Source of the DNA: Octopus sinensis
Lineage: Eukaryota
Assembly (NCBI RefSeq): GCF_006345805.1
Contig: NC_043003.1
Span: 83,886,001 to 83,950,000 of the forward strand
Reading direction: 5' to 3'
DNA length: 64,000 nucleotides
The notes beneath the pieces were generated by a model that saw only the letters and a list, made by a program, of their open reading frames with translations, did not search any database and was not told the origin of the DNA. Both the position numbers and the translations under genes were made by a program. Shown here piece by piece: positions 3,001 to 47,957 of the stretch; position 1 is the stretch's first letter, and each line of letters begins with the position of its first letter.

Positions 3001-3251
3001 TGGTTCAGCAGAACTGTAAGATTGTAGGTGTGGATGCCTTGTAGCATTTACTCTGGCTCATTATAGTCTGGGTTCAAATAGTGCTATGGCCTACAAGACA
3101 ATCTATTGCCCATATTATCACCACCATCTGGCACCAGTGTGTCTATTGGAGTCCACTCTATTTCAAGCAAGCAGGCTAAGTCTCTGGTTTGAGCATGTCT
3201 TCTTCCCCCTCATCCACTAGTCTTGGAGGCCATTCCTACTCTCCTGATTAA

Positions 3252-3284
<33 letters not shown>

Positions 3285-3839: not shown

Positions 3840-3949
3840 CGCAAATAGCAGCACCCCATTTCTTTATTTCAACAAAATGGCAAGACAACTGTCGGCCACC
3901 ATACCAGCGACCATTAAATTTGGTAAATGCGTTGAAAGCATCCTCTTCA
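3840..3949 (-). CDS. ZRSR2: ZRSR2 exon 9 (EEDAFNAFTKFNGRWYGGRQLSCHFVEIKKWGAAIC)
   Basis: Poly-T+cccag acceptor, donor GCG|GTAAGC, 110 nt, phase 2 to 1. Confidence 0.96.
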
Positions 3950-12340: not shown

Positions 12341-12378
<38 letters not shown>

Positions 12379-15300
12379 ATATATATATATATATATATTA
12401 CAGACAAGAAAGTAAATTTCAAATGCAGTGTAACTATGAAACCAGCAGACAAAGATTGGGTATTTACCCTTATAAAACAAAGTTGCCAGCAGGTGGCTAC
12501 AAACACACACACACACAGACAGAGGCATTACATCATCGACATTATTAAATGTCCACCTAGCCATTGTGTTATGGATTGGATTGGTCAATATGAACCAGAA
12601 GACAGTGTCTGCTTTGGGATGGTTTCTACAGCTGGATGCCCTTCCTAACACCAACCACTTCACAGTGTGCACTGCATTAGGGTTAGGTTTTCACGGTGCC
12701 AGCACAGATGAGATTACAAAGTACCAGCGAGACAAGACCCTTCAACTAAATAGAGTATAGTACTAAGAGATAAGAAAGTAAGATATAGGGGGATAGGAAC
12801 AGGTGTCTTGATGAAGAGGTAAATACAAGGATTGTCCATCAGGAAAGAGAAAGATAGAGAGATGTGAGGTCAAAGTTCACGCTGAAAACAAAAGATGGAA
12901 TAGGGGATCTGTAGTTAAGTATGCTAGAGTGAGAATAATGTGACAGATGATTAGAGATAGGGAGTGAATTGGATGCTGAGAACATCAGTTCAGTAGATGG
13001 GAGGTGAAGTAAGGAAACAGGGTACTACAGAAAACTGACTGAAGAATGGGTATCAGAAGACGAGTTGTGGAGGAAAGCTTGACAGAACCTCAACTCTGCT
13101 GAGATGAATTGGTCTTCTTAAGCACAGCACAGGGCCATTCAACTCAATCATCCATCACCTCCTCCAAAAGCATCTTGAGGCCAGTTTTCACCACTTCATC
13201 TCACATTTTCCTGGCTCAACCTGTTGCACAGGCTCCTTCCATGTTTAGTAATTGGAACTTCTTTATACAGCTGTTCTCATCAGTTAACACCACTTGACCA
13301 TACCAGCACAATCTTCTCTCCTTCACAACCCATTTGATGCATCTTATACTCCATTTTTCTCTTAACACATATGTACTTTGTCATACAGCCATCAGACCAT
13401 GTTAGTTTAATTTCTTTCTAGTCTTTGCAGGTCTCCTGAATTCACAGCCCTAGTTTCACAACCTTGTCGCATTGCTATTTGTATACAGGCATCATATAAT
13501 CTGCCTCTCACTCTGAACTTTCTTCAGCTAGTTCTTATTTTAGCAACTATACTTTCATAAGATCCTCCTCAACTGTTAACTGGTCACAAAGGTAACAGAA
13601 ACTATCTACTACTTCTAGGGAGCCTCCTGTGCATTCCAGGACATCTATTTCCTGTGAACAAATATTCTTTATTGCTCCTGCACACATACCACTAATATAT
13701 TCTACTTTCTCCATTGACCTTCCCGTGATTTCACTGGACCTCTTATGAGGCAATAGTTTGCACTGAGGACACTGTATGGAATATCTACACATGAAGCAGG
13801 GCCATTTACCTGAGATGATTAGCGTTCTATTTGTCTACCTGCTTACTAGAACTTCAGTCTTTTGCTAAGTTAACTTTAAAATGCTCTGATTCCAGATTTT
13901 GCAACCACACCCGGAATTTCATTTTTAGTTCTACCAATTTCACTTATAAGAACAAGGGCACCAGCAAAGAGGAGCTCCTATGGGCAGCTGTTCTTAAATT
14001 CTTCTGTTATAGTCTGAAGGACTATGATAAAGAAGCAAGGATATAACCAAACTCTTACACATTAAGTTTATTGCTGCACTCATTAATTCTGAGTTAATGA
14101 TGCTGACAGCATCCCTGAATATGGTTCGAATGGTCCTCTCTAGCCATTCACCTACTCTTAGCTTCCACAGTAACCACTGGATGAAGAAGCAAGGTACTCT
14201 GTCAAAGGCTTTCTCCAGGTCTAAAAATGTTTAGTATGTATGTACACACACACAAAGGATAGTGATGTTCTTTTATAAGTTCACGAGTTGCAATGAAGCT
14301 GGGGCACTGTTTTCTAGGGTACAGTCCATTACATTGATCCTGCTATTTATTCTTACTGATCTTGGAAAGAAGAAAGACAATGCAAACCTGGGTAGAAGAT
14401 GAACTCCGAGCATAGAAGAACATAACCAAAAACCACAACATTCAAGCAATTCTACCAGTCTACATTTTTTATTAATAAAATACACAAATATTTTTTGAAT
14501 GATAATGAAACGTCAAGAAGGAAGAAAATATTTTCATATATGAATAATGAAATCAACTGTAATAATCTTATAAAATAACATATATGCAGTTGAACTATTA
14601 TTTATAGTTGAACTGACAAGCAAAATCATTTATAGAAGGACTTATTCACACATACTGTGATGCTTCTAAATTAATATTCTAAATGAATAACTCTCTGCCT
14701 GAAAAATGAAAAGTATGTAGTTGTCTGAATAAGCGATGAATACGATGATGTTGTGCTCAAATTTAATGCAATGTAAATTTACCTTTCTCCAAATCGGCAT
14801 GCACCAGTTTTGGCAAAAAACGAACAAACTTCAACGTCTCTCTTTTGGTGATGGTAGCTGATTGGAGCAAGTGGGTTGTGAGAACACTGCCCTCCCTATA
14901 AGATGGAGTTAGTGAATATTAAGAAATGTCAATAAGAAGAGAAAATAGAATCAGATAAATACAAAGAGTTATCTGCCCTTTGAAGGTGATGTGAATGAGA
15001 CATAAAACAAATACAAGAATTAGCGAACGTCATATACAGTAATCCCTCGCCTATCGCGGGTGTTACGTCCTAAAACCTCCCGTGATAGTTGAAAATCTGC
15101 AAAGTAGAAACAGTTCTGTACTGTATATATATATTTTTTATCACTTTTATAATTTGCATATATTTATTTTATTATAAATGCAAAACAACACCACTCACTT
15201 GCCTCCCGAGTTACGGTTTCCATACAGTATGTGCAATTCTTCGTTTACTCATCTACGGTACACTACAGATTTTCTTTTAATATATTATAATTAATGCGTT

Positions 15301-18300
15301 AACAGTACAGTACTGTAGCCTATTTTTATTTATTAATACATTAATTTTTTTGGCGTGAAAATGATTATTTTAGTGCTGAAATAATTAAAATCTAAAACAT
15401 TATAAATACCTATTGGCTGCAGAAACCCGCGATATAAATTTACATATATTATCCAGAAAAATCCGCGATGTACTGAGCGCATGATAGGTGAATCGTGATG
15501 TACTGAGTCCGTGATATGGTGAGGGATTACTATATTGCAAACAGTACACAACTTTTATTAAACATAAGTTTTATAATGTCAAGAAAATCTAAAAAGAGAC
15601 ATTTATTACTATTATTAGAATGAGTGGGTTTGCTCATGATGGTGTTAAGCATTTTGTCTGGCATGCTAACAATTCTGCCAGCTCATAACCTTCAGCCTCC
15701 TAAAATAATAATAATAATAATTCAAAAAACGTAAAATATGTTAGTTAATACTCACAGAATTTAGTGCCTGATTAATTGTTGCTTCTTTCAGTAGTGCTTC
15801 CTGCAATAGTGAATTGGGTGTCAGAAATAGGAATAATTGTCTAGGATAGCAGTATTAGGTGAACAATGCTGGTATCATTGTGCCTGTATGCATATGTGTG
15901 TATATATAGATATATACACACACACATACATATGAATTGCATATGGAAACAGAAGGCCTGCAAATACTTGAAACATGAGTTAAGGTAACAATCCAAGTTT
16001 AGCTTTCATAATATATTGAGTTAATAGAAAGAAATTGTAGAAATGCATGGAGTTAATTTGAACAGAAATTTTAACAGTTTATTTATTGAAAAGGAAAAGG
16101 AGAAAACAAAGAAGGGTCTACACCCCAAAACATTGGGGTTAATATACATTTCTTTATTGCCCACAAAGGGATTGAGGTGATTTCATTGACCTCAGTGTGT
16201 AAGTGGTATTTATTTAATTGACCCCGAAAAGACGAAAAGCAAAGTCGACCTCGACGGAATTTGAACTCAGAACATAAAGGCAGATGAAATGCCGCTAAGC
16301 ATTTTGCCTGGCATGCTAATGATTCTGCCAGCTCGCCGCCCTCAATTGGGGTTAATATTGTCATTGTACAACTAAACTAGTGGCGATATAGTAGAGGCAG
16401 GGTGGGTGTTAGATGAATAGGTTCAAGAAGAACATTAATGACATCAATCTAGGAGAGCCTGCAAGGCCATAGGCATTGCCCCTTCCTCCAGTACTATTGA
16501 ACAAAAAAACGAAAGTTCTGATGGTGAAGGGCTGGGTAAAGTACTCACTCTAGTGTTTGTAATGTGTGTGAGGGTGTGGGGTGGATGGGGGGAATGTAGA
16601 GCAACAAACAGTAAGAACGATGTAAGCAGAGCTGTCTTAAGACATAGGCACACTGTGTAGTTGCCCAGGGGCCTAATGTGTCTAGGAACCTAGTTCTGAT
16701 CTACGTATGCTTGGCTTGCTGTCAATACATAAATACTCTAGGGCTCAGCACACTGATTTGTCTGGGGAAATCTATAATACTGCTGAGATGGCCCTCAGTG
16801 TGAGGAGAAAAAAAGCCGGTGAAACAAGTGGGTTTAATTTGAAAAAAAAAAAAAAAGCTGTCTATCAGCAGGATTGATAGTAAAACTACCCAACAGACAG
16901 ACAAATAATACAGGGTTCAATTCCACTGCAAGGCACCGTGGGCAAGTGTTTTCTCCAGCTTTGGGAGAGAAATTTAGAAGATAGAAGCAGAGGAGAATGC
17001 AGTTGGATGTGAACCAACAAAGGAGCATCTATGTAGTAATTCGATCTGCTAGAAACAGCAGCTAAATCTACCTCAACTCACACTGCTGTCTTAAACAATA
17101 AAAGGACATGTTAAATAACATAGTCCTTCATATGCTTAAAAAGGAGGTGGAATACCTTTAAGCATATGTCTGTTCACTTAAGGTTGACCAAACTGAAGCT
17201 ACACATCTAACCACTTATTCCCCTCTTGCTATCCACCACACTCTCAGCCCTATCATATCTAGTTCCGAAATCACATTAAAAATCACCCAATACATTATGT
17301 TAAGTGTGAAACTGGGAGATCTCTTTAAAATTATTGAAGGCATGACAATTTTCCTAGCACTGCTGCCACTGTTAAGGTCACTCCCTCTGATGAAGAGAAT
17401 TTATTTTTAACTACCCACAAGGGGCTAAACACAGAGAGGACAAACAAGAACAGACAAACGGATTAAATCAATTACATCGACCCCAGGTGTAACTGGTACT
17501 TAATTTATTGACCCCGAAAGGATGAAAGGCAAAGTCGACCTCGGCGGAATTTGAACTCAGAACATAACGGCAGACGAAATACGGCTACGCATTTCGCCCG
17601 GCATGCTAACGTTTCCGCCAGCTCGCTGATGAAGAGAATTGACCTGCAAGAGTCCTGTGGTGGTACCATGTTAAAAGCACCCAGCACACACTGTGAAGTG
17701 GGTGGCATTAGGAAGGGTAATTAGCTGTAGAAACCAAACCAAATCAGACAGGAATCTAGTGCAACTCTTCGGCTTGCTAGCTCAGGTCAAACCATCTAAC
17801 CCATTCCAGCATGGAAAATGGGTGTTAAATGATGATGATGATGATGAATATTTCCAGATTCAATTTATTCATAAATAAATGTCCAAGTGGATATGCAGTT
17901 GGATCAAACCTTGAACTATATAGTTACAAAACAAACTTCTTAAGCACCAGCTATGTCTTCATTCAGAAGAATAAGCCATACTTGAGTAAAAACTTACTCT
18001 AGATACACTCAGTACATAATTCTATCAATTCTGTACCAAACATTTTAATATCATCCACTATATATAACAAGCATTGTCCCACAAAAGGTTTATTCTTTTA
18101 TTTGCTTCAGTCATTAGACTGTGGCCATGCTGGGGCACTGCCTCGAAGAATTTAAGTCAAATGAATCAATCCCAGGACTTTTTTATTTATTTTTTTAAGC
18201 CTGGTACTTATTCTATTAGTCTCTTTTGCCAAACTGCAAAGTCACAAGGGATGTAGTTACATCAACACCAGTTGTCAAGTGGTGTAGGGGACAAACACAG

Positions 18301-21300
18301 ACATGCACCCACCCACCCACACATATATATATATATATATAGAGAGAGAAAGAGTATATAAGGAGTTTTTGTCAACTGATGTGAAGTAACACGTCTCTCT
18401 GACTCCTCCTTCACTGATAACAGGTTACTCAGCTTATGCAATCCTTACTCAATATCGCGATCCACAGACTCTATATGTTTATATTCTCTATTTAAATTAA
18501 ATGTCTTTTACAAATGATGCCAAACATTTTGCTAGTTCATTCTTACCTTAATCTATCTATCTCTCTATCTAGATCTATATCTATCTATCAGTTCCCACCA
18601 ACCAAATCCACTCACAAGACTTTGATCAGCCTGAGGTTACAGTAGAAGACACTTGCTTAAAGTGTCATGCAGTAGGACTGAACCCAGAACCATGTGGTTG
18701 GGAAGCAAGCAGCTTAGCACACAACCACTCCTGTGCCTAGGAAAGTTTTTTGACAATTTACAAATTAAAACATCTATTTAATTTTACAAGTAAAAATCCA
18801 TAAAATTCAAAAAATATAAAATGATTACACACACAGAGACACATACATAAATATATACATCATCATCATCATCATTTAGCGTCCGTTTTCCATGCTAGCA
18901 TGGGTTGGACGGTTTAACTGGGGTCTATGAAGCCGGAAGGCTTCATCAGGCACAGTCAGATTTGGCAGTGTTTCTACAGCTTGATGCCCTTCCTAACGCC
19001 AACCACTCCTCGAGCGTAGTGGGTGTTTTTTACGTGCCACCTGCACATATATATATATGTATGATGTATATAAATATATATCTATATATCAATATGAAAC
19101 AAAAAGATAAACAGACATAAAATAAATAAAAGATAAATAGAAAGATATAAAATAAAAAGATACAGTTCATCAACAAAGTGTTGCTGCATGAAATCCAGCT
19201 TGTGAAATAGTTAAGGAATGAATTTTAAAAGGCAAAATAGTGCTGAAAGAAAGCATTAGTTTAAAACAGGTTGTTGTTTCCAACAGTTCACACAGTATAT
19301 TTTGAATCTTAAATAATAGGTTAATAACACAGGAAATATGAAGAAAAAGAAAGAAAAAAAATTTTTCAACTTTGATCAAACTGAAACGAAAATCAACTAA
19401 TTGTGAAGCAATCAAGAAATGTTACTGATGTAGTTTGAGAGAATTACGGTTAGTGGGTCTCACAAAATCACATGACAGACATGTATGTGAGTATGTATAT
19501 GTACACCCACAGCCACGGTGATAGCTTAGGAGTGAAATTTAGGATTTCTCGGTTTTCTGTGAATCAATTTTGATAAAATGTTTCCCAGCTGGTTTGCACA
19601 ATATGGCAACACCATTATGTTGTTTCCATTATTCTGTGTAATGTTCTTTCTTTTTTATTTCAGATTCTTTAGTTTTTGGGTGAACCATACTAATAGCTTT
19701 TGAAAGAAAACAGCCCATCTAGACATTTTTTCAGAAAATGAAGGGTAATGATACATATTAAACATACATTGAGTATATATTTAACAGAAAACCATAATAA
19801 TGTTATAACACTTATTGACATAATGAATTATTTAGCCACATAAGCACAATTTTGGCAGATAACTTCAAAAACCCTATTAGTTATGGAATCTGTCAATTTT
19901 TTATAATCTATTAGCATGGTTCTGGGTGTATATATAAATCATCATCATTTAGTATCTGCTTTCCATGCTGGCATGGGTTAGATGGTTTGACTGGAACTCG
20001 TAAGCTGGAGTTCCAGTCTGATTATATATGTGTGTGTGTGTATAAATACATATATATAAAAACTGGCACTCTGTTGGTTATGACAAGGGTTCCAGTTGAA
20101 TGGCCTACTTGTGGCATTAACATGAGAGTGGCTGAGCACTCCACAGACATGCATACCCTTAACATAGTTCTCAGGGTGATTCAGTGTGATACATAATGTG
20201 ACAAGGCTGGTCCTTCTGAATTACAGGTACTACTCATTACTGTCAGCTGAGTGGACTACAGCAACCTGAAATAAAGTGTATTGCTCAAGGACACAATGCC
20301 AGAATGGAAAACTGATGATGATGATGACGACAGCGACATATATATAAAATTCTTTCTAATTTTGGCACAAAGTCAGCAATCTTGAGGAGTGACAAAGTCA
20401 ACCAAATCAACCCCCAGAGCTAAACTGGTACACCACAAAAGGATTTAAGATAAAGTTGGCCTCAACAGCATTTAAAATCAGAATATCAAGGGCTGGCAGA
20501 AATGCCACTAAGCATCTTGTCTGGTGTGACACCAATTCTTCCAGTTCTCCACCTTATACTTGTAAATATAATCATCATTAATTACCCGTAGGGACACCGT
20601 ATTTCATTATGCAACCACAATATACTACAAAGTGTATCAAACATTTTTATAAGCCAATACTGCATTCTACTGTGTTAGCAGTGCTATCAAATCACATGTT
20701 AAGGTGTTAGTAGTGCTTTTAATCACATGTTTATTATTAGCAGTGCTATTAAATCATATGTTAACATGTGTCAATCATTATTGTTTTATATCTGCTTTCC
20801 ATGTGGGCAAGTGTAGGATGGTTGGTCATAGTCAGAGTCAGCATGTATTCCAGAGCTACTGTTCACCTAGACAGTTTGGGAGTCCTCATTTCTTTCGTGT
20901 TAATTTTTGGTTTGATTTCTATACTTGGATGCTTTTCCTAAAACCACATAGTGTACTCGAAGCTTTTTCTTTTTTTTTGTGGCACCAACACTACAGAAGT
21001 GTCATGCCCTCAACAAAACTAAAGGTTCCTGAGATCTTCATACTTGACAAAGTGTATACTGACACTCTTATCAGTTATGACAATAAGGGTTCCAGTTGAT
21101 TTGATCAACAGAACAACCTGCTGGTCAAATTAATGTGCAAGTGACTGAGCACTCCACAGACTCGCATATCCTTAACATAGCTCTCAGGGAGATTCAGCAT
21201 GACGCATCAAATGTGACAAGGCAGGTCCTTTGAAATACAGATACAATTCATTTTTGCCAGCTGAGTGGACTGGAGTAATGTGATATAAAGTGTCGCACTC

Positions 21301-24300
21301 AAAAACAGTGTGCTGCTGGGAATTGAACTCATGACCATACAATGGTGAGCTGAATACTTTAACCACTTATTGATGCGGCTTTGCCTGACAGAGTGCACTG
21401 AATGCATTTTCCTCAATGGTTGCAATGTCCTTACAACTTCACTCTCTGCTTGCTCATCTACCTCTTTACAGAGTGAGAGGCATGAATAATAAAGGGATTG
21501 CCACCACCCCCTGCCAGAGCCTCGTGGAGCTTTAGCTGTTTTCGCTCAATAAACACTCACAATGCCTGCTCTGGAAATCGAAACCATGATCCTACGACCG
21601 ATAGAATAAGTACTAAGCTTACAAAGAATAAGTCGTGAGGTCAATTTGCTCAACTAAAGGTGGTGCTCTAGCATGGCTGCATTCAAATGACGGAAACGAA
21701 TAAAAGAATATATATACATACACATACATACAAAATGAAATAAATATGTATGGAAGAACATTTAGGATATAATTGGATGTACTCGTCCAAAGTCACCTGT
21801 TTCTCTTTTTTTGCTTTTTCAACTGATTCTAATTTTTCTCTCTCTTCTGTTTCTTTCCTCTCTTGTTCTTCCCATTCTTCTCTGATTCGTCTCTAGAATT
21901 TAAAAGAAAATGAAAAAGAAATAGAAAAAGAATTGGAAAATTGACATTGGCAGGAGACAAATTTTTCGTCTCTAGAATTTAAAAGAAAATGAAAAAGAAA
22001 TAGAAAAAGAATTGGAAAATTGACATTGGCAGGAGACAAATTTAATGTGGAGATGTACAGATAATTAAATAAACCCTGGTACATTACTGATATTTATCAA
22101 ACTGAACTGAAGATAATTTTGGACCCTTACCATTTCTACTACTCTACCTTCCATACAATAATAATAATCCTTTTTACTATAGGCACAAGGCCTGAAATTT
22201 TAGGGGAAGGGGTCAGTCAATTAGATCAACCCCAGTATGCAACAGGTACTTAATTTATCACCCCCAAAAGGATGAAAGGTAAAGTCGACCTTGGCGGAAT
22301 TTGAACTCAGAACATAAAGACAAGCAGAATGCCACTAAGCATTTTGTCCAGTGTGCTAACGACTGTGCCAGCTCACCGTCTTACTGCTACTACTACTACT
22401 AATAATAATAATCCTTTCTGCTTTAGGCACGATACCTGAACTTCAGGGGCAAGTTGATTATACTGACCCCTGGCTCACCTGTTGAAGACAATGTTTGAGT
22501 GTTCAGCTTCTGCCGAACGACCTCCACAAAATAACTTGTTTATGGGATCAAGTGTTCATGCTGCACATTAGCTCACTCCCAACCCCATCGAATCAATGTT
22601 ACCTGAACAGGTGCACAGTGTACCACGTGTCAGGTGTCAAAGTGATCGCAGAGCAATGTAAGATGAAGTGCTTTGCTCAAGAACACAAAGCATCACCCAG
22701 TCTAGGAATTGAAACCACAATCTCATGACCATGAGTGCAATATCCTAAACACTAGGCCATGTGTTAAGGGTTTCAAATTCTGGCAGAGGACTAGCAGTTT
22801 TTGAGGGGAGAAGAAATTTAATTACATTGATGCTAGAACTTGAGTGGGTGGGGGTTACTTGATTATATCAACTCCAGCTCAACAGGTGTTTTATGGATCA
22901 TGGACTGTTTATTGAACATGGAGGGATAAAAATCAAAGTTGAATCCAGAGTGATTTGAACTGAGAAAACCAAGAGCCAGAACAAACACGACAAAGCATTT
23001 TTTCTGATGCTCTAATGATTCTACCAGCTTGTAACCTTCTTAATAATAATAATAATAATAATGATGATGATGATGATGAGGAGGATTTCAAATTTTGGCA
23101 TACAACCAGCAATTTCGGGGGAGGGGATGAGTGAAATACATTGACCCCAGTACTCAGCTGGTACTTATTTTATCAACCCAAAAAGGATGGAAAGCAAAAT
23201 GGACCTTGGTGGAATTTAAACTCAGAACATAAAGGTTTCAGATTTTGGCACAAGGCCAGCAATTTTGTGGGAAGGGGTTAATTTGATTACATTGACCTGG
23301 TCCTTATTTTATTGACCCTGAAAGGATGAAAGATAAAATCGACCTTGGCGGAATTTGAAAGACAGATGAACTAAAAATAATAATAATAAAGCTAAAGTCA
23401 AGATCAAATAAATAGTGCATGGGTTAAATTGGCAAAAGATGACCATCCCCACATATAACAATATCTGTTTCAACACACATTTCCACAGCAAGAATATTGC
23501 AGAACAAATACGTAGATGTTTGATAAATGGTTTCTAATTTAGATACAAAACCAGCAATTTTTGAGGATAGGGGTTAGTCAATTCCATTGACACTAGTACT
23601 AGACAACTACTTTATTTTATTGACCCCCAAAAAGATGAAAGGGAAAGTTGACCTTGGTGGGATTTGAACTCAAACTATAAAGGGCCAGAATATAAGCACA
23701 TCAAAGCATTTTATCTGACTCTTTAACCATCGTGCCAATCTACAATCCATAATAATAATCATTTCAAACACCCTCTCTCTCAGGTGAGACATCCTTGTCT
23801 TGCAAGCCACTCAGTGACCTCATGGGTGCTGGTGCCTGCTGAAACGCACCATGCTGAAGCCATGAGACACTCATGCCGGTGCCATGTAATAAGCACACAT
23901 GCTGGTGCCATGTAAAAAGCATCTGTGCCTGTGCCACGTGCCAGTTCTGCATAAAAAGGACCCATGCTGGCACCACAAGAAGGCACCCAATACAATCAGT
24001 AAAATAGTTGGCATTAAGAAGGGCATCCAACCATAGAAACTATACAAGGCGGCGAGCTGGCAGAAACGTCAGCACACCGGGTGAACTGCTTAGTGGTATT
24101 TCGTCTGCCGTTTCGTTCTGAGTTCAAATTCCACTGAGGTCGACTTTGCCTTTCATCCTTCCGGGGTCGATAAATTAAGTACCAGTTACACACTGGGATC
24201 CATGCAATCAACTCAATCCCTTTGCCTGCCCTTGTTTGTCCCCTTTATGTTTAGCCCCTTGTGAGCAGTAAAGAAATAAGAAACTATATCAAAACACAAC

Positions 24301-27300
24301 TGGTGCCTGGTACAATCATTCAGCTTTCCAGCACCTGTTGAACAGTCCAACCCAAGCCAGCATGGGAAATGGACACTAAATGATGATGACGATGATGATG
24401 ATGCACACGGCCAGCAATTTTGAGGGGCAGGGTTAGTTGATTAAATCAACCCCACAACTTGACTGGAACACTACCGGTCCAAGAGGAATGACAGGTGAAG
24501 TTAACCTCAGCAGGATTTGAACTAAGAATGTAAAAAACTGGAACAAATACTGCAGGGAAGTATTTAATGTCTGGTACTTCATTGGTTCTGACGATGAAAC
24601 TAACGTGCAAGTGGCTGAGTACTCTACTAACGCACGTAGCCTTAATGTAGTTCTCAAGGAGATCCAGTGTGACACAGAATGTGACAAGGTTGGCCCCTTT
24701 CAAATACAGGTACTACTTATTTTTTCCAGCTACGTGGACTAGAGCAACATGGAATAAAGAGTCTTGCTCAAGGATATATTGCACCACCAGGAATCGAACT
24801 CATGACCTTACAATTGTGAGTTGATTAGTCTAACCACTAAGCCATGTATCTTCACAGTATTTAATATAATAACAGAGTTATTATATTAAAATATAATAAC
24901 AGAGTTATCATCATCATCATCATCATCATCGTTTAACGTCCGTTCTCCATGCCAGCATGGGTTGGACGGTTCGACCGGGGATCTGGGAAGCCAGAAGGCT
25001 GCACCAGGCTCCGGTCTTATCTGGCAAAGTTTCTACAGCTGGATGCCCTTCCTAACGCCAACCACTCCGTGAGTGTAGTGGGTGCTTTTTACGTGCCAGG
25101 CGAGGCTGGCATCGGCCACGGTCGGATTGGTGCATATTAAAATATAATAACAGAGTTATTATATTAACATAGGAAAATAAAATATTATTGAATTTTGAGA
25201 TACCCACATCCTGTTCTTCTCGACGTTTTCTTTCTTGTTCTTCATGCTGTTTCTGAAGTTCCCATTCCTTCTGAGCCTGTCTTTCTCGTTCTAACCAGCG
25301 TGCATGTTCCACCATCTGTAGTTGCACTTCTTTGTCTCTTGCTTGTTCAGAAATGTCATTGTCAGAGCTACTTTTATCACAGGTTTCTGAAAAAACAAAA
25401 AAAAAAATGTAAAGTATAGAAGCCATCTTATCATGGCTAACCACATTGGGGAGGGGGTGTTACTGTAGCTTTATAGCCCCAAGAGATCGTCGTCTCTAGC
25501 TGGCTTAGACACAATATCAGTGTCTTGGAGTATTTGCAAAGGGAGGCCATCCTTCCTCACAAGCCTGAGTGATACGCTCGAACTAGTTTCGGGATTGTTG
25601 TCCCTCGTCAAAAAAAGAAAAGTAATAGGTGCAGATATGGCTGAGTGATTAAGAAATTTACTTTCTAACCACACAGTTTTGAATTCAGTTCCACAGCATA
25701 GCACTTCGGGGAAGTGTCTTCAACTATAGCTTTGAACCAACCAAAGCCTTATGAATGGATTTTGTAGATGGAAACTGAAAGCAGCTTGTCATATACATGT
25801 GTGCGTGAGTATGTGCATGTTTGTGTTTCTTTGTCTCAATAGCACATAATAGTTGTAAACGAGTGTCATTCATTTTCAATCTCTCATAAAAACATGTCTG
25901 GTCTCATTTGGAAACAGGTATGGGTTGGTAACACGAAGGGCATCTAACTGTAGACAATCTGCCTAAATAGACTCTGTCTATCCCCTGCAAGCGTGGAAAA
26001 GTGGATATTCACCCTTAAGTATTTAAATCAGCTATATCCAGCTCAAATAGTCTACCTATTTTGAGTTCAAACCAGCTAGACCTGGCCTCTCGTACCTACC
26101 TTACAATATCATTCTAAAAGTAATTAATCACATCACTGAAATCTCAAAGCTACAAGAAAATGTATGGTTAATTCAAAACAATGTAAATAAGCATTATATT
26201 TGAGAGAATAATTAGAATGCTAAAGGGTTACAATGATGATCATCTCAATCAACTTCTTTTCTTCTTCCATTGACTACACAACTTGTACATATATATACCA
26301 CAATGGTCTCATCACAACCTCTTAATTATAAGATTTGCCCAGAAGTGCCCATTGTTGTCTTTCAAAGCTGATTATACCTCGGGTTGCAGCTCCATAACAG
26401 TGGGGGTTTGCATCTCAACCACCCTTACTGAGCATAATCAGCATTAACCCTTTTGTTACCATATTTTTGGAGAAATACACTGCAGAGTCAAGACTATCGA
26501 AAAGGTTGCAAGACGCAACGAAAATTTTAGGAAAATAAAAATAAGAAATAAGTGGAAATTTTACCGGTGAGTGTGTTACATTATAAGGCACAAAAAGAAA
26601 ACGACTCTCCCCAGACACAACAGAATACACTGCTTTGTTTCAATTCATTTTTAAAATAATGACAAATTTAGTGAAATGACTTAGTCATTGCTAAGCTGGT
26701 GTGTGGAACATAAACTAACATGAAGTTTTGACAAGGATTTAATTTAGATCACTTTAGCACAAAGAATTTTTATCAGAGAACCAAGGATGGTATCAAGCAG
26801 AGTTACTATCAAAAGGATTAACAAGATTTGTGCAGGATTCTCAATCAGTCTTTTGCTGATAAAAGGCTGGGAGATGTTGAAATCATCATCTCCATTGCCA
26901 GTACCGCCTGACTGGCCCCCGTGCTGTGGCACGTAAAAGGGCACCATTCGAGCGTGATCGTTACCAACGTCGCCTTACTGGCACCTGTGCTGGTGGCAAG
27001 TGTAAAAAGATTTGAGCGAGGTCATTGCCAGTACCACCTGACTGGCCCCTGTGCTGGTGGCACGTAAAAAGCACCCACTACACTCTCGGAGTGGTTGGCG
27101 TTAGGAAGGGCATCCAGCTGTAGAAACTCTGCCATATCAAGACTGGAGCCTGGTGCAGCCATCTGGTTCGCAAGTCCTCAGTCAAAATCGTCCAACCCAT
27201 GCTATCATGGAAAGCAGACGTTAAACGATGATGATCATCATCATCATTGTCATCCTTTCATATCTATTTTCTATGCTGGCTTGGGTTTGTTGGTTTGACC

Positions 27301-30300
27301 AGAGATGGCAAGCTGGAGAGCTGCACCAGGTACCAGTTAGATTTAGCTTGGTTTCTACGGCTGGATGCCCTTCCTAATGCCAGTCACTTCATAGTGTGTG
27401 CTGGGTGCTTTTAATGTGATACCAGCACAAGGACTTTTAGGTGGTGCTGGCACAAGTGCCTTTACGTGGCACCAGCACAGAACTCTTGCAGACCAATTCT
27501 CTTCACCAGGGGAAGTGGCCTTAACACATCTCTGCTGTGGAGGAGGGGGTCTTCTTGAGAACAGTAAGGTGCCAGGTATCTTGTCATCAATTGATTACAT
27601 CAATCTCAGTATTTGAGTAGTACTTTATTTAACCAGTCTTGGAAAGATGAAAGGCTAAGGTGCCTTTACTAGGACTGTTGAACTTAGAACATAAAGGGTT
27701 AGAAGTAACTAGTGCAAAGTATTTTGTTTGGTGTAAACATAGCTGTATGAATATGGAGCTTGCTCCACAACCATGTGACTTTGAGTTCTATCCCATTGCA
27801 TGTTACCTTGGGAAAATGTCTAAACTTTAGTAGCTTAGAGATGATCCATGCTTTTTCATTGAAATTGGTAGGTGGAAACGCATGTATATAAATATGCATG
27901 TGTGTGTGAATGATGAATTTCTGCATCATTTGAACCAAAAAATGGTGATGTAATGTTTATATTCGTTGTGAACAACATATCTGAGCTTTTGAAGTCTAAT
28001 GGAATGAAAATTCTTTGTTTGAATAACAGGTAAATGATTAACTGGATGAGTATCTAGTTGCCTTAATAGTGCCTCAAATAAGTATCCACCCAACCCATGT
28101 CAACATGGAAATATAGATGTAAAGTGAATAAACAAATCCTAATGATTCTGCTTATAAACAGATGTAATAAACACAGAAGAGAGAGAGAAAGAGAGAGGTG
28201 GGGTGGGAGATAGAAAAAGAGAGAGAGAAGGAGAGATAGAGAAAGATATTGTCAGCAAGTTCTTACTTACCAAGGTTATTGTTCTGGGCAAGTTTTCTCC
28301 GTTTTAATTTCCTTTTTAATTTCTTTAAAAGTTTCTTCCAACTTTTATGACTAATAAAATATAAAATAAAATTTCATTTGTTTGCAGAGAAATACTTCTG
28401 AAATCATGTAATAAGAATGTAAACCATGACAAAAATTTAAAAAATTGATTTTATTGTCTGTATAAAACATGACATTGAAAACAGAAGCTCTTTGACTTGA
28501 GCAATCAATAATCCAGTCTCACTGGCTGTGTATGTGTTGTGTGTGTGAGAGAGAGAAAGAGATAGAGAGATTCTTTTTTTTTAATCCCATTCTAGCTTAA
28601 TCTAGAGGGACTAAAAGGAAGTGTTTTTCATAGAATAGTATCTAAGCATAATAGATTGAAGGCCAGTAAGGGCTATGGGCACCATGGCCTCTTCTTCCTC
28701 AGATTAACTCAAAATTAAAAAGAGATAAAGTTGCAAATTCTACTATTAACAGAGAGTGTGGACCAAATAATTAGCCAAGAGTTCAGCACTTCAAATCTTG
28801 TCCCTCAACACTGTCTTTGTATTGAACTGTTATATAGCCTTGTTGACCAAACTGAAAAGTACTGACAAGTGCAGGTAAAAGCCACAACTGATAAAATTAA
28901 TAAGAACTTTGTTGAGTTTATGGTGCTGAGTCTAACTCTTCCAGTAAACATAACTTTCTATCTTATAAAGGAATGTTTTCTGCTGTATGAATTGTTGAAT
29001 ATCTATTATATAAAATCCATTCTGTGTGTGTGTGTGTCTTCTAGGATCTCAGGCATTCTCCATCCGATTGCACTCAAATTTGATATGTAGATACCGACGA
29101 TATCAGGGCGTGTCTAAGTCTTGAAAAAATTACAAAAATCAATTCCAGGTGAGAATGCGATTGATAAAGCCGTGGGAACGTGCATTTGTATGCGCAAGTA
29201 CATCAGTCGAAATCTGTCTTTTGCTGGTGTCTCAAATTTAGGTTAAATCAGTGTTTCTCAAAGGGGAGGCTAATGGAACGGTCAGAGAAGTTGTTATGAG
29301 TAAATTTGGTGTAAATGTTTGACAACTCAGCACTGTCCATTGGATGAAGGGGGGGGGGGGCTTTTACTATATAAAGAGCAAAAGTTTACAGCACAGTCGA
29401 AAATCTTAGGTGGTTAAGGTGTTGAGCTCATAAACAAATGGTCATGGGTTCAATTTCTGGATTGGGTAGCAGAATGTGTCGACTAGCAAGGCACTTATTC
29501 CATGTTGCATCAGTCTACCCAGCAGGAATGAATACCAGCCAAGTGCAGCCCTCACTTCTATCAGCTGTCATATCCATATTCCACTGGGTTAACAATAGAC
29601 TGAAAGGGTATTCATGCCTGCTTGTGACTATACTGACACCTAAAATAATTAGCAAAAGCATGGTAAACACAGCCAGATCATACTTGCTTCTGAGTGACAG
29701 TTGTAGTTTTGGTTACTACACTTCTATGCAAGTCTGACCAAGAGCCAGTATGGGAATATGAGATAAGGCACATTTGTAGAAAGATAAACTGATTGGTAAC
29801 ATATTGACCACACATAGACAGAGGCGATTAGTATTCACCTACTCTTTTTTACTCTTTTTACTTGTTTCAGTCATTTGACTGCGGCCATGCTGGAGCACCG
29901 CCTTTAGTCGAGCAAATCGACCCCGGGACTTATTCTTTGTAAGCCCAGTACTTATTCTATCGGTCTCTTTTGCCGAACCGCTAAGTTACGGGGACGTAAA
30001 CACACCAGCATCGGTTGTCAAGCAATGCTAGGGGAACAAACACAGACACACAAACATATTCACACACACTTATATATATATACATATATACGACAGGCTT
30101 CTTTCAGTTTCCGTCTACCAAATCCACTCACAAGGCATTGGTCGGCCCGGGGCTATAGCAGAAGACACGTGCCCAAGATGCCACGCAGTGGGACTGAACC
30201 CGGAACCATGTGGTTGGTTAGCAAGCTACTTACCAAACAGCCACTCCTGCGCCTATGGGAGTTACTTTTGGATCATTGACTTTGATCATTACAATAATAA

Positions 30301-32381
30301 TTGCAGAATCAGTAAAGTTCTAGATAAAACGAATTGTATTACCATCATCATTGAGTGTTCATTTTTCCATGCATGCATGGTTCGAACAAAGTTTGAGGCA
30401 GATTTTCTATGACAGGATGCACTTCCTGTTGCCAACCCTCACCTGTCTCTACAGAAGGTAATATTTCCCCATGCTCTTGCATTCTCACAGAAGATTGGAA
30501 ATGAAAAACACTGCTTGTATGACAGTGACATTCATTTACAACAATCATACAATATCAAGACAAGGAGACACACACACACATATTTTAAAGAATGTGGAGC
30601 ACTTAAGATAAGTTTTAATCACACATTTACATTTTCAAGTTATTGTGGTGTGACAAAATGAAACAACGGCCAGGATATTGCGTCTTTCCAAATTCCAGCT
30701 GAGTCTTATACAACTCTTTTGTTTTTTTTTTTACTTGTTTCAGTCATTTGACTGCGGCCATGCTGGAGCACCGCCTTTAGTCGAGCAAATCGACCCCGGA
30801 ACTCATTCTTTGTAGGCCCAGTACTTATTCTATCAGTCTCCTTTGCCGAACCGCTAAGTGACGGGGAAGTAAACACACCAGCATCGGTTGTCAAGCAATG
30901 CTAGGGGGACAAACACAAACATACATATATATATATATATACGACAGGCTTCTTTCAGTTTCCGTCTACCAAATCCACTCACAAGGCATTGGTCGGCCCG
31001 GGGCTATAGCAGAAGACACTTGCCCAAGATGCCACGCAGTGGGACTGAACCCGGAACCATGTGGTTGGTTAGCAAGCTACTTACCACACAGCCACCCCTG
31101 CATCAATAAGAAATACAAACTGGATCCCTAACCAAGAATTGAATATCAGTTTCATCGTTCTTGGGATTTGCACTTGGAATTTATTAGTTCAAACTGTCAA
31201 ATTTGCCACCATCTCAGGTGATAGAGAGTTCAATCTAGATAGCACATCCTATTCCATTGTCAATGACTTGGTTTGTATTTTGTACAGGTATAAATTTGAG
31301 ACATTTAGAGAAAAAGGTTCTCTTTCTACTGCAATTTCCTGACTTAACTTCTTCTTCCGACCACGAGCAGATAGTGTTTTCTACGACCATGGAATCAAAG
31401 ACATAGCTTTCATTGGTAATGTACTTTGTGCAAACTACGTGCGTTTTCATCCCACACAATATAGTAACAGACTTCTACAAGCACTGACAAGCGATTCTTT
31501 ATCAAAACTGACTCCAACTCGCCGAAGTTGTGAAACTTGGTAACGATTCAATAAAATCTCTAATTATCACTCTGAAACTTATCATTTTATGCAACACATC
31601 TGCTTCTTAATACTGCAACAGCTCCACCATGTCACTATCTATTTTACCGTTACATTCGGCGTTACACTTGCATACCTTTTAAGGTTGTTATTAAATACTT
31701 CTATGTTACATCAAGTTCTTTTCTTTCTCGTTTTAAATATGGGCAATGTTTCGTTTGTCGCCTAAATATGTTTTTTCAAATGAACTCATAAGTATTGTTT
31801 TTATACCTCATTAGAACGTAAAATAATATATTTTTGAAAAGTTGTTTATAAGTTTCCGTTTACACCATTACATCTCAAAATGAATGCTATTTTTGTAATT
31901 CCTTTGATATTATTTCTAAATATTTTTTTTTCTCCCAAAATAAGGTCAGCAATATTTGGGTTTTGGTACATAAAGCACTCCCCAATTCCTCGAAAATAAA
32001 TATCGAACAGTGATGTCTCACATAAGCACGATGCCACAAATTTCAGTGACAGAACGCAATCCGATTATTTAACCGACCCCAGCACATGGTTACAAGTTTA
32101 TTTAAGGACACCACAAATCTGAAAGGTAGAGGCAACTTTGTTTAAATCAACAACAATGAGGGATATAATTAAATACTGCAAAACATTCGATCCAGCGCTC
32201 CATCGATTCTGTCAATCACAATATTATTAAATATAGTGAATCTTTCAACGAAATTTCATTTCAATTTTCAGACGTTGCAATATTTAATCTTTGTAAATGC
32301 TTACCTCATTTTATTTCCCTGTATAAAAGTATCAGCCGACGGCCCAATCAAACTAGTTAAAGCCTCCTCCGATATTTCCAT
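3840..32381 (-). CDS. ZRSR2: ZRSR2 / U2AF35-related splicing factor, spliced CDS (9 exons, 3' end runs off window)
   Basis: Exons 32305-32381, 28271-28350, 25208-25386, 21797-21892, 15756-15800, 14783-14895, 11413-11516, 7309-7471, 3840-3949 join in frame (967 nt) with GT-AG borders. Product: MEISEE...SHKSWKKLLKKLKRKLKRRKLAQ...charged coiled coil...CSFFAKTGACRFGERCSRNH (CCCH)...FYEDVLPEFKAVAQVVQFKVSCNYEPHLRGNVYVQF...FNGRWYGGRQL (UHM)...KWGAAICG. This is collinear with human ZRSR2 as recalled; the long N-terminal charged region separates it from U2AF1. Confidence 0.95.
7309..7471 (-). CDS. ZRSR2: ZRSR2 exon 8 (UHM/RRM: FYEDVLPEF...VSCNYEPHLRGNVYVQFK)
   Basis: Acceptor tttttgtag, donor AAC|GTAAGT, 163 nt, phase 1 to 2. 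Confidence 0.96.
8323..9652 (-). mobile_element. 5'-truncated, internally deleted RTE-clade LINE (RT fragment + C4HC3 finger + C-terminus + 3' UTR)
   Basis: ORF 8930..9646: GVHQGSVLSPLLF, LLYADDL, KGLRVNLAKTKV, GRGRPRKTW. (ATG)n tail at 8323-8340. Confidence 0.93.
10374..10586 (-). mobile_element. tRNA-derived SINE (family A) with 15-bp TSD
   Basis: Head (gg)cgagctggcagaaacgttagc. TSD aaaagttaacattct at 10359-10373 and 10587-10601. Many other copies, e.g. ~17400-17625, ~24049-24279, ~22180-22380. Confidence 0.85.
11413..11516 (-). CDS. ZRSR2: ZRSR2 exon 7 (CSRNHPEPEVCTTLVFPGMYTHMTLDNAQDDYDT)
   Basis: Acceptor ttgtag, donor CTG|GTGAAT, 104 nt, phase 2 to 1. Confidence 0.93.
11875..12290 (-). 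mobile_element. RTE LINE 3' UTR fragment with (ATG)n tail, partner of the U6 chimera
   Basis: Near-identical to the 3' UTR of the RTE copy at 8323-8930 and ends in the same (cat)n tail. Confidence 0.9.
12291..12378 (-). pseudogene. U6: U6 snRNA retrocopy (about nt 20 to 3' end), fused to RTE 3' end
   Basis: Reverse complement reads ATATACTAAAATTGGAACGATACAGAGAAGATTAGCATGGCCCCTGCACAAGGATGACACGCAAATTCGTGAAGCGTTCCATATTTTT, one mismatch (G>A at a CpG) to vertebrate U6. The 5' stem-loop is missing and no U6 promoter is visible. Confidence 0.97.
12560..14225 (-). mobile_element. Older degenerate RTE LINE
   Basis: Frameshifted remnants such as ITEEFK..CP*ELL (~13960-14010), LEVVDSFCYL (~13590) and a RLCWYG-like segment (~13300). 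Boundaries approximate. Confidence 0.65.
14783..14895 (-). CDS. ZRSR2: ZRSR2 exon 6 (GGQCSHNP...CSFFAKTGACRFGER), first CCCH finger
   Basis: Acceptor cttatag, donor AAG|GTAAAT, 113 nt. KTGACRFG is a U2AF35-family motif. Confidence 0.95.
15037..15532. mobile_element. pogo/Tigger-type MITE
   Basis: Imperfect TIRs CAGTAATCCCTCGCCTATCGCGG ... CCGTGATATGGTGAGGGATTACTA with flanking TA. Confidence 0.8.
15756..15800 (-). CDS. ZRSR2: ZRSR2 exon 5 (EALLKEATINQALNS), 45-nt small exon
   Basis: Acceptor ttgcag, donor TCT|GTGAGT, phase 0/0. Corresponds to the short EALQKMLDQAENE exon. Confidence 0.8.
21797..21892 (-). CDS. ZRSR2: ZRSR2 exon 4 (RRIREEWEEQERKETEEREKLESVEKAKKEKQ)
   Basis: Acceptor ttctag, donor CAG|GTGACT, 96 nt, phase 0/0. 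Confidence 0.92.
21886..22043. repeat. Perfect 2x79-bp tandem duplication spanning the exon-4 3' splice site
   Basis: 21886-21964 is identical to 21965-22043. Confidence 0.95.
25208..25386 (-). CDS. ZRSR2: ZRSR2 exon 3 (ETCDK...EHARWLERERQAQKEW...RKRREEQD)
   Basis: Poly-T+cag acceptor, donor GAT|GTGGGT, 179 nt, phase 1 to 0. Lies inside ORF 25052..25444. Confidence 0.92.
26443..26820. mobile_element. piggyBac-like MITE carrying a nested piece of a second MITE
   Basis: TTAA-cccttttgttacc ... gttactatcaaaagga-TTAA. Internal ~26490-26628 matches 52430-52570. Confidence 0.55.
28271..28350 (-). CDS. ZRSR2: ZRSR2 exon 2 (HKSWKKLLKKLKRKLKRRKLAQNNNL)
   Basis: Acceptor ttttattag, donor G|GTAAGT, 80 nt. 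Resembles ZRSR2 SHKKYRAALKKEKRKKRRQELA. Confidence 0.92.
29844..30254 (-). mobile_element. tRNA-derived SINE (family B)
   Basis: Head ggcgcaggagtggctg..., internal (CA/TA)n, tail gactgaaacaagtaaaagag. Similar copies at ~30720-31100, ~38112-38530, ~45615-46007, ~7813-8104. Confidence 0.85.
32305..32381 (-). CDS. ZRSR2: ZRSR2 coding exon 1 (MEISEEALTSLIGPSADTFIQGNKM-S)
   Basis: ATG at 32381, 25 codons + 2 nt, donor AG|GTAAGC. Phase 2 matches exon 2. Confidence 0.8.
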
Positions 32382-39337: not shown

Positions 39338-40277
39338 GTCATTTACTTTTAATCTGCATGTTTGATGCAATCACTTGCCGGGGCACACCCAGCGCCCTAG
39401 GGCAAGTGAAGGTTAAGAGTTGTTGAAATATAGCTGAAAGCTTGGGGAGGGGAAGTAGAGAAATATCTCCATGTAATACAAACACAAACATTTACATTGA
39501 TAGAGTTTTTCTAAGGATGTGGGCAGTACTTGTTAGCACAATCTTTTGGATTTCCTTGAGACATGGTTCTCCAGGGATATTGTCTAGGTGTTCTGACATC
39601 CCTTTTTTATCATACCTAGGGCACCTGCAATAACAGGAACAGTTTTGTTTTAAGATTCCACATCTTTTGTATTTCGATTTCCAGGTCCTTATATTTACCA
39701 AGTTTGTCAAATTCCTTTACAGATACATTTTTATCAGTGGGGACGCTTACCTCTATTAGTCTGCAGGTATTTTCTTCCCTGTCTTTAACAATTATGTCTG
39801 GTCGATTAGCCTTGATCGTTCTGTCAGTGTTGACTGGAAAATCCCAGAGGATGGTCACATCCTTACCTTCAACAACTGGCTGAGTATGGTGTTCATACCA
39901 GTTAGCAGGAGTGTCGAATTTGTAGTATTTACATATCTTCCAATGTATATACTGTCCTACCCTTTCGTGGCGATTTTTGTATTCGTTTGGTGTCAGGACA
40001 GGACATCCCGAAACGAGATGGTCTATCGTTTCGTCAAATGTGTCGCAGAATCTGCATTTAGGGTCAGTACCGTTTCGGAGAACGTTAGCCTGGTAATTTC
40101 TGGTAAACAAGCTTTGATCTTGTGCTGCCATTATGAAGCCTTCAGTCTCTGCTTTCAATCCAGAACTCTTCAGCCACTGATGGGTTGTTGCTTGGTCTAC
40201 ATCAGCATTTTGGCTTCGGAGAATATATTGTCCATGCAGGAGCTTCTGGCTCCACCGCCTCTCAATTTGATTCTGCC
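39338..40277 (-). mobile_element. 5'-truncated R4/Dong-like RLE non-LTR retrotransposon
   Basis: Frame open from RRWSQKLLHGQY..HQWLKSSGLKAETEG through CRFC..ETIDHLVSGC (CCHC), WDF, RPDIIV, EVSVP, KLGKYKDL. One frameshift near 39630, then ...LRKTLSM*. (TAA)n at both ends. Confidence 0.88.

Positions 40278-40328
<51 letters not shown>

Positions 40329-47863: not shown

Positions 47864-47957
<94 letters not shown>

What the first reader, a model, noticed from the sequence alone, without database searches (positions are those of the whole stretch)
21886..22043. Exact duplication of a 3' splice site in the gene for a 3'-splice-site recognition factor: candidate poison acceptor
Seen: a perfect 79-bp tandem duplication copies the pyrimidine tract, the AG and the first 7 nt of exon 4. 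There are therefore two identical acceptors, AG at 21973-21972 (upstream) and 21894-21893 (in frame). Using the upstream one reads AGA CGA AAA ATT ... TTC TTT TAA, a premature stop after 23 codons, well before the zinc finger and UHM. Established: U2AF35/ZRSR2-family proteins recognise the 3' AG, and splicing-factor genes often self-regulate through AS-NMD. Inference: first-AG scanning should favour the upstream, unproductive site, so this is either a tunable autoregulatory switch, a recent hypomorphic allele or a mis-assembly.
Basis: partly seen in the sequence, partly recalled or inferred. Interest (0 to 1): 0.7.

Follow-up and report, generated by a model that had tools for sequence, protein, structure and literature searches.

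The report
Duplicated splice acceptor in octopus ZRSR2
A perfect 79-base tandem duplication really has copied the end of an intron in an octopus splicing-factor gene (ZRSR2), giving two identical acceptor sites, but nothing shows it is a regulatory switch; it looks like a young duplication that is tolerated because the original site still makes the normal message.

Summary
Window 21886-22043 is a 79 bp x 2.0, 100 % identical tandem duplication. The unit is found nowhere else in the window. The gene on the minus strand is a ZRSR2 (U2AF35-related) orthologue of an octopod. The closest protein is the Octopus bimaculoides ZRSR2-like model, 93 % identical, and it confirms the exon 3/exon 4 join at the downstream AG. 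Each copy carries a TTCAT branch-point candidate 18 nt from its AG, the pyrimidine tract, TAG and 7 exon bases.

Intron 3 and all other introns seen are U2-type, the class read by U2AF1 rather than ZRSR2. Two identical sites offer no difference in affinity for a sensor to use. First-AG scanning does not decide between them, because each AG has its own branch point. Any frameshifting insertion of AT-rich intron would bring an early stop. Perfect identity means the duplication is young.

Exon context strongly favours the downstream site (90 % purine and 15 GAR triplets in 60 nt, against 32 % and 1). The best reading is a recent, tolerated duplication with some unproductive leakage. An assembly artefact cannot be excluded. 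No orthologous DNA, reads or RNA-seq were reachable.

The parts
21886..21964 (-). Copy 1 of the 79-bp unit (downstream on the gene strand). It holds 72 nt of the intron-3 tail (21964-21893) plus the first 7 nt of exon 4 (21892-21886), and contains the authentic, in-frame acceptor.
   Evidence: the join is supported by P0028
21965..22043 (-). Copy 2 of the 79-bp unit (upstream on the gene strand), 100 % identical to copy 1. It lies wholly inside intron 3 if the downstream acceptor is used.
21893..21894 (-). AG of the productive acceptor (ttctAG|AGACGAATC).
21972..21973 (-). AG of the duplicated, out-of-frame acceptor (ttctAG|AGACGAAAAATTT).
21910..21914 (-). TTCAT branch-point candidate of the downstream acceptor. 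The A at 21911 is 18 nt from the AG.
   Evidence: the only yUnAy motif inside the unit; inference, not mapped
21989..21993 (-). The identical TTCAT branch-point candidate of the upstream acceptor. The A at 21990 is 18 nt from the AG.
   Evidence: inference
21900..21902 (-). TAA premature stop, read only if the upstream acceptor is used. It is codon 24 of the extended exon and lies 103 nt upstream of the exon-4 donor.
21797..21892 (-). Exon 4 of the ZRSR2 orthologue (96 nt, phase 0 at both ends). It is purine/GAR-rich and encodes RRIREEWEEQERKETEEREKLESVEKAKKEKQ.
25208..25386 (-). Exon 3 of the ZRSR2 orthologue. Its donor GTGGGT starts at 25207.
21893..25207 (-). Intron 3 (3315 nt, U2-type GT-AG) as defined by the downstream acceptor. 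It includes the extra copy of the unit.
3840..32381 (-). The part of the ZRSR2 orthologue present in the window. Exons: 32381-32305, 28350-28271, 25386-25208, 21892-21797, 14895-14783, 11516-11413, 7471-7309, 3949-3840. The second zinc finger and the tail lie beyond the window start.

Best explanation
This is a real, evolutionarily young tandem duplication of 79 bp that happened to span the intron 3/exon 4 boundary of an octopod ZRSR2 gene. The unit carries a complete 3' splice-site module: a branch-point candidate, the pyrimidine tract, TAG and 7 exon bases. The authentic acceptor is left intact next to its purine-rich exon. The extra copy can therefore be removed as part of intron 3, and the normal mRNA is still made.

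That is why such a duplication can persist. A 79-bp duplication wholly inside the exon would always shift the frame. The upstream copy is a competent competitor and is probably used in some fraction of transcripts. Those transcripts gain 79 nt, stop after 23 codons and should be removed by nonsense-mediated decay. The net effect would run from neutral to mildly hypomorphic.

Shown here: the anatomy, the reading frames and the gene identity. Inferred: which site is preferred, the decay of the long form, and that the duplication is a neutral or slightly deleterious variant rather than a regulatory device.
For: 1. The duplication is perfect, has exactly two copies and is unique in the window.
2. 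Both copies contain the same TTCAT candidate 18 nt from the AG and the same tract, with pyrimidine fraction 0.80 over -23..-4.
3. The downstream join reproduces the protein junction of the O. bimaculoides orthologue. It also gives an open 307-aa model with zf-CCCH and RRM/UHM domains.
4. The downstream AG is followed by 90 % purine and 15 GAR triplets in 60 nt. The upstream AG is followed by 32 % purine and 1 GAR triplet. By established knowledge, purine-rich enhancers act more strongly the closer they are to the acceptor.
5. The window has other tandem duplications of similar unit size and graded age: 82 bp x3 at 100 %, 130 bp x2.1 at 97 %, 182 bp x2 at 94 % and 58 bp x2 at 88 %. Such events are therefore part of this genome's normal turnover.
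6. The window has no N and runs through microsatellites of 100-300 bp. That points to a long-read assembly, in which a k-mer-overlap artefact is unlikely.
7. Precedents exist for tandem duplications whose duplicated splice signals let the extra segment be spliced out or ignored: PMC3265369 and the F7 intron-7 minisatellite, PMC1557585.
Against: No reads, no second assembly, no orthologous intron and no RNA-seq could be reached. So neither the reality of the duplication nor the usage ratio is shown.

From my own knowledge, classic tandem-acceptor substrates often use the intron-proximal (upstream) site substantially. The leak could therefore be large.

The absence of microhomology at the breakpoints is a little unusual for replication slippage.
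Confidence: 0.6

Rival explanations
1. Assembly or polishing artefact. The individual has one copy, and the second was introduced during consensus building, polishing or gap filling in a low-complexity A/G-rich stretch.
For: The identity is perfect, the copy number is an exact integer and there is no microhomology. A second perfect, integer-copy repeat (82 bp x3.0) lies in the same 64 kb. The unit is partly low-complexity (nested periods of 6 and 12).
Against: The window is gap-free and spans long microsatellites, which suggests long reads. The eight exons read are free of frameshifts, so the consensus is of good quality. Older, diverged tandem duplications of similar unit size sit nearby, which shows the process is natural here.
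Confidence: 0.17
2. Strong hypomorphic or null allele. The upstream module wins the competition and most transcripts carry the 79-nt insertion and are degraded. The allele would be a deleterious variant, probably heterozygous in the sequenced animal.
For: The upstream module is sequence-identical from -72 to +7 and is transcribed first. Tandemly duplicated acceptors are known from my own knowledge of in-vitro and in-vivo model substrates to use the upstream site to a substantial degree. The stop meets the usual rule for decay, being 103 nt before the next junction with further junctions downstream.
Against: The exon-side context of the upstream site is intron-like (32 % purine), and the enhancer-like sequence starts 87 nt away from it. 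ZRSR2 is essential in the vertebrates tested (e.g. zebrafish, PMC9501576 abstract), so a strong loss-of-function allele should be rare.
Confidence: 0.17
3. One reading: an evolved autoregulatory poison acceptor. ZRSR2 protein level sets the ratio between the two AGs and so controls its own mRNA through unproductive splicing and decay.
For: The gene encodes a 3' splice-site factor. An unproductive acceptor with an early stop exists in silico. Self-regulation by unproductive splicing is established for many SR and hnRNP genes (general knowledge).
Against: Intron 3 and every other intron seen are U2-type, while ZRSR2 binds U12-type sites and U2AF1 binds U2-type sites (PMC10853781). Identical sites cannot be told apart by affinity. 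100 % identity means there has been no time for selection to shape the element, unlike conserved poison exons. The stop is an automatic by-product of reading intron out of frame. A literature search for ZRSR2 autoregulation by decay listed only general papers, judged from titles and abstract openings; none was opened.
Confidence: 0.04

Closest known systems
Human F7 intron-7 37-bp minisatellite, whose first unit spans the exon 7/intron 7 boundary (PMC1557585)
   Same: A tandem repeat that straddles a splice junction and so creates sequence-identical pseudo splice sites next to the authentic one. The exon-adjacent site is the one normally used and the copies stay silent (abstract).
   Different: That case is on the donor (5') side, has several copies and is a long-standing polymorphism studied by experiment. 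Here the acceptor side is involved, there are two copies, and there are no expression data.
Tandem duplication with duplicated splice signals that lets the redundant segment be spliced out (Rogers model; Hellsten et al. 2011, PMC3265369)
   Same: A short intragenic tandem duplication is tolerated because the duplicated splice signals allow the extra copy to be removed, leaving the protein unchanged.
   Different: There, an exonic AGGT segment is duplicated and a new intron is born. Here, an existing intron is simply lengthened by 79 nt and gains an internal decoy acceptor.
Laboratory substrates with tandemly duplicated 3' splice sites used to study site choice (beta-globin and adenovirus constructs; own knowledge, not retrieved)
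   Same: Two identical branch-point/tract/AG modules compete for one donor. The ratio depends on the adjoining exon sequence and on SR/hnRNP levels.
   Different: Those substrates are engineered. This one is natural, sits in a 3.3-kb intron, and only 7 nt of exon accompany the upstream copy.
Unproductive splicing (AS-NMD) autoregulation of splicing-factor genes through poison exons or alternative sites
   Same: An alternative splice choice would introduce a premature stop in a splicing-factor transcript.
   Different: Known cases are ancient and strongly conserved, and they respond to the factor's own binding sites. Here the element is young, the two sites are identical, the intron is not of the class ZRSR2 reads, and usage is untested.

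Membership tests
ZRSR2 / U2AF small-subunit-related proteins | N-terminal CCCH zinc finger (ZnF1) | tested here: met
   Pfam zf-CCCH, E = 2.4e-09, residues 165-189 of the spliced model
ZRSR2 / U2AF small-subunit-related proteins | Central RRM-like U2AF homology motif | tested here: met
   Pfam RRM_1, E = 8.9e-06, residues 236-292. PDB best matches are the U2AF 23 kDa and 35 kDa subunits, E = 2.3e-24.
ZRSR2 / U2AF small-subunit-related proteins | Closest named relatives are ZRSR2 rather than U2AF1, with a long charged N-terminal extension before ZnF1 | tested here: met
   Hits named ZRSR2 at 54-60 % identity over ZnF1-UHM. The N-terminus is 93 % identical to the O. bimaculoides 'U2AF 35 kDa subunit-related protein'. 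About 160 residues precede ZnF1.
ZRSR2 / U2AF small-subunit-related proteins | Second CCCH zinc finger and C-terminal RS-rich tail | not testable with these tools
   The last exon seen ends at 3840 in phase 1. No ZnF2 was found at 1-3839, so it lies beyond the window.
Autoregulatory AS-NMD poison splice site | An alternative site whose use creates a premature stop more than about 50 nt upstream of a downstream exon junction | tested here: met
   TAA at 21902-21900, 103 nt before the exon-4 donor, with four more junctions downstream in the window. In silico only.
Autoregulatory AS-NMD poison splice site | The site is actually used, and the product is stabilised when decay is blocked | not testable with these tools
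   No transcript data. The protein database holds only the productive O. bimaculoides form.
Autoregulatory AS-NMD poison splice site | Evolutionary conservation of the poison element | tested here: inconclusive
   No orthologous DNA was obtainable. 100 % identity of the copies argues for a recent origin.
Autoregulatory AS-NMD poison splice site | The encoded factor acts on the regulated site and can tell it from the productive site | tested here: not met
   The two sites are identical from -72 to +7. The intron is U2-type, the class bound by U2AF1 and not by ZRSR2 (PMC10853781).
U12-type (minor) intron | Donor /RTATCCTT and branch box TCCTTRAY 10-20 nt from the 3' end | tested here: not met
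   The intron-3 donor is GTGGGTAT and its 3' end is ...cattttcttttaaattctag. The eight donors read (seven complete introns plus the exon-8 donor) are GTAAGC, GTAAGT, GTGGGT, GTGACT, GTAAAT, GTGAAT, GTAAGT and GTAAGC.
Tandem duplication spanning a splice junction | Head-to-tail identical copies that include a complete splice-site module, with the authentic site left intact | tested here: met

The most novel reading that the evidence does not exclude
A splicing-factor gene caught at the birth of an unproductive-splicing valve. A one-step duplication would have created a decoy acceptor whose use depends on the cell's general 3' splice-site or SR-protein activity, of which ZRSR2 is one component. 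That would give ZRSR2 output an immediate negative feedback on which selection could then act.
Probability: 0.04. Interest if true: 0.7.

Novelty: new member of a known kind. Interest (0 to 1): 0.27.

Why it matters
If the duplication is real, it is a clean natural experiment in acceptor choice. Two modules identical from -72 to +7 differ only in what follows them, inside an essential gene of an animal with little splicing genetics. Junction counts would show how strongly exon context outweighs position. If it turned out to be polymorphic or shared among species, it would show how decoy acceptors, the raw material for unproductive-splicing control, arise in a single step. As it stands it is an ordinary young tandem duplication, and that it sits in a 3' splice-site factor gene is a coincidence. 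With about one perfect duplication of this size per 32 kb in this window, hundreds genome-wide would be expected to hit an acceptor.

Tried and rejected
1. Finding the same locus elsewhere. The protein search with exons 3+4 returned only the O. bimaculoides model P0028. Its encoding contig is not on record. An exact-match scan of metagenome contigs with a 38-nt stretch of exon 4 found nothing. The other DNA collections are bacterial, viral, plasmid or E. coli, so no comparative or population test was possible. The third protein search was not spent, because searches showed that the database lacks other cephalopod ZRSR2 sequences.\n2. Dispersed repeat. Rejected: the unit has only its two copies in the window. 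SINE-like repeats flank it at about 22160-22385 and 21596-21710 but do not include it.\n3. U12-type intron, which would have linked the site to ZRSR2's own function. Rejected from the donor and branch-region sequences.\n4. Alternative donor GTATCT at 25203 with either acceptor. Read by eye from the sequence, both combinations run into stops; no script was run for this donor.\n5. The second AG of TAGAG. Read by eye, it also shifts the frame.\n6. k-mer-overlap artefact (79 = k or k-1). Judged unlikely because the window is gap-free through long microsatellites. It is not excluded.\n7. Literature on natural duplicated acceptors. Four full-text searches gave the F7 and intron-gain precedents. They gave no direct study of a natural acceptor duplication and no report of ZRSR2 autoregulation. 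The papers opened were not relevant.

Full report
**Observation**

The minus-strand sequence of 21700-22250 shows the string aaatttgtctcctgccaatgtcaattttccaattctttttctatttctttttcattttcttttaaattctagAGACGAA twice in immediate succession. Tandem Repeats Finder reports 21886-22043 as period 79, 2.0 copies, 100 % matches and 0 indels, score 316. The repeat finder gives two 79-nt copies at 21886-21964 and 21965-22043 with 100 % identity. A blastn of the unit against the whole window finds only these two copies, so it is a local duplication and not a piece of a dispersed element. The breakpoints show no microhomology.

**Which gene**

A database search with the spliced ZnF1-UHM peptide returned proteins named ZRSR2 from many vertebrates at 54-60 % identity, and a bivalve protein at 64 %.

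A search with the exon 3+4 peptide returned one protein, P0028. It is the Octopus bimaculoides 'U2 small nuclear ribonucleoprotein auxiliary factor 35 kDa subunit-related protein' (XP_014778217.1), 93 % identical over the whole query. The window therefore comes from an octopod other than O. bimaculoides.

Mapping P0028 back gave exons 1-4. After refining the boundaries, the model is:
- e1 32381-32305
- e2 28350-28271
- e3 25386-25208
- e4 21892-21797
- e5 14895-14783
- e6 11516-11413
- e7 7471-7309
- e8 3949-3840

All introns are GT-AG, and the model gives an open 307-aa product. Pfam finds zf-CCCH (E = 2.4e-09) and RRM_1 (E = 8.9e-06). The closest solved structures are U2AF small subunits (E = 2.3e-24). 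The second zinc finger and the tail lie beyond the window.

**Consequences in silico**

Joining exon 3 to 21892 gives ...EEQD|RRIREEWEE..., the same junction as in P0028 (...EEQD|RQIREEWEE...). Joining exon 3 to 21971 adds 79 nt and reads RRKICLLPMSIFQFFFYFFFIFF followed by TAA at 21902-21900. That is 23 codons into the extended exon and 103 nt upstream of the exon-4 donor, with four further junctions downstream in the window. By the usual rule this is a substrate for nonsense-mediated decay. The stop is not a sign of design: 79 is not a multiple of three, and the inserted sequence is AT-rich intron.

**Anatomy of the two acceptors**

On the gene strand there is no AG between 22077 and 21973, and none between 21971 and 21894. 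The only yUnAy motif inside the unit is TTCAT, with its A 18 nt from the AG. It is present in both copies, at 21990 and 21911. Each AG therefore has its own likely branch point, its own tract (pyrimidine fraction 0.80 over -23..-4, longest run 10) and the same TAG|AGACGAA.

Scanning starts at the branch point that was chosen, so the decision is made earlier, when U2AF and U2 snRNP choose between two identical modules.

What differs is the sequence after the AG. The 60 nt after the downstream AG are 90 % purine with 15 GAR triplets, the composition of a strong exonic enhancer. The 60 nt after the upstream AG are 32 % purine with one GAR. With introns of 3.3 and 6.9 kb on either side, recognition across the exon is expected, and enhancers act more strongly the nearer they are. 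This is established knowledge and was not tested here. I therefore expect the productive site to be preferred, with an unknown and possibly appreciable share going to the decoy.

**Is it an autoregulatory switch?**

Four points speak against it.
1. All donors in the gene are ordinary U2-type: GTAAGC, GTAAGT, GTGGGT, GTGACT, GTAAAT, GTGAAT, GTAAGT and GTAAGC. The 3' end of intron 3 has no U12 branch box. Genome-wide binding data show that U2-type sites are recognised by U2AF1 and U12-type sites by ZRSR2 (PMC10853781, abstract).
2. A sensor based on site recognition needs two sites of different strength. These are identical from -72 to +7.
3. Known poison elements in splicing-factor genes are ancient and conserved. 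Here the copies are 100 % identical, so the event is recent.
4. A full-text search for ZRSR2 with autoregulation and nonsense-mediated decay listed, by title and abstract opening, only general papers. None was opened.

The idea is not excluded, but nothing supports it beyond the coincidence of gene function.

**Is it real?**

The window contains another perfect repeat, 82 bp x3.0 at 56251-56497. It also contains older tandem duplications of similar unit size: 130 bp x2.1 at 97 %, 182 bp x2.0 at 94 % and 58 bp x2.0 at 88 %. This graded series suggests a natural, ongoing process. The window has no N and runs through microsatellites of 100-300 bp, and the eight exons read are free of frameshifts. 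That fits a good long-read assembly, in which a k-mer-overlap artefact is unlikely. Even so, two perfect integer-copy repeats in 64 kb keep a polishing or consensus artefact on the table (about 0.17). I could not reach reads or a second assembly.

**Why a duplication here is not very surprising**

A 79-bp duplication inside exon 4 would always destroy the frame. One that carries a whole acceptor module leaves the authentic site untouched, and the extra copy can leave with the intron. This is the same logic as intron gain by tandem duplication (PMC3265369). It also parallels the F7 minisatellite, whose first unit spans the exon 7 donor and creates identical but silent pseudo-donors (PMC1557585). 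Survivorship therefore enriches for exactly this kind of junction-spanning duplication. With about one perfect duplication of this size per 32 kb in this window, and acceptors covering about 1 % of the positions, hundreds of such cases would be expected in a genome of this kind. One of them falling in a 3' splice-site factor gene is a coincidence of modest weight.

**Comparative and population tests**

These could not be run. P0028's contig is not on record. A metagenome scan with an exon-4 stretch found nothing. The protein database holds no other cephalopod ZRSR2.

**Verdict**

The sequence observation and the annotation are correct. The functional reading is an untested conjecture with several points against it. 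The most likely explanation (0.6) is a young, tolerated tandem duplication that adds a decoy acceptor inside intron 3, with some leakage into a decay-targeted isoform. The alternatives are:
- an assembly artefact (0.17);
- a strongly hypomorphic allele (0.17);
- an evolved feedback switch (0.04).

Interest is low to moderate. The locus would be a neat natural test of acceptor choice if reads and RNA-seq confirm it.

Noticed in passing
window 56251-56497 (and 56624-56705): A second perfect tandem repeat: 82 bp x3.0 copies at 100 % identity, with 1 nt of microhomology at the end. An inverted copy 84 % identical to the unit lies about 130 bp downstream, so the array sits in one arm of an inverted-repeat structure, possibly a foldback or MITE-like element. 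It bears on whether perfect integer-copy repeats in this assembly are natural or artefacts.
   Followed up: partly
window 12291-12394, minus strand: Rfam U6 snRNA match (111 bits, E = 3e-28) inside intron 5 of the ZRSR2 gene. On reading, the first ~25 nt (the 5' stem-loop) are replaced by a (TA)n run, while the rest, from ACTAAAATTGG to the T-run, is intact. It therefore looks like a 5'-truncated U6 pseudogene or retrocopy. It abuts a 62-bp tandem-repeat element.
   Followed up: partly
window 8442-8744 and 11993-12343 (also 26893-27069): Copies of a dispersed element that contains an internal tandem repeat of about 62-64 bp (GGTGCTTTTTACGTGCCACC...), present in several introns of the gene. It is probably an octopod SINE-like family.
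   Followed up: no
window 8930-9646 (minus) and 39616-40323 (minus): Open reading frames that, by eye, look like reverse-transcriptase / non-LTR retrotransposon fragments (e.g. ...YADDLALIAES...). They lie in an intron of ZRSR2 and upstream of the gene. No family search was run on them.
   Followed up: no
window 21970-21973 and 21891-21894, minus strand: Each acceptor is a TAGAG, with a second AG 2 nt downstream of the first. Use of the second AG would shift the frame. The first AG is the one supported by the orthologous protein.
   Followed up: yes
window 42887-43423 and 47887-47970: Purine-rich GA/GAGA-type tandem repeats (130-bp and 58-bp units, plus a (GA)43 run) upstream of the gene. They give spurious E/R/K-rich tblastn matches to the charged N-terminus of ZRSR2.
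   Followed up: no
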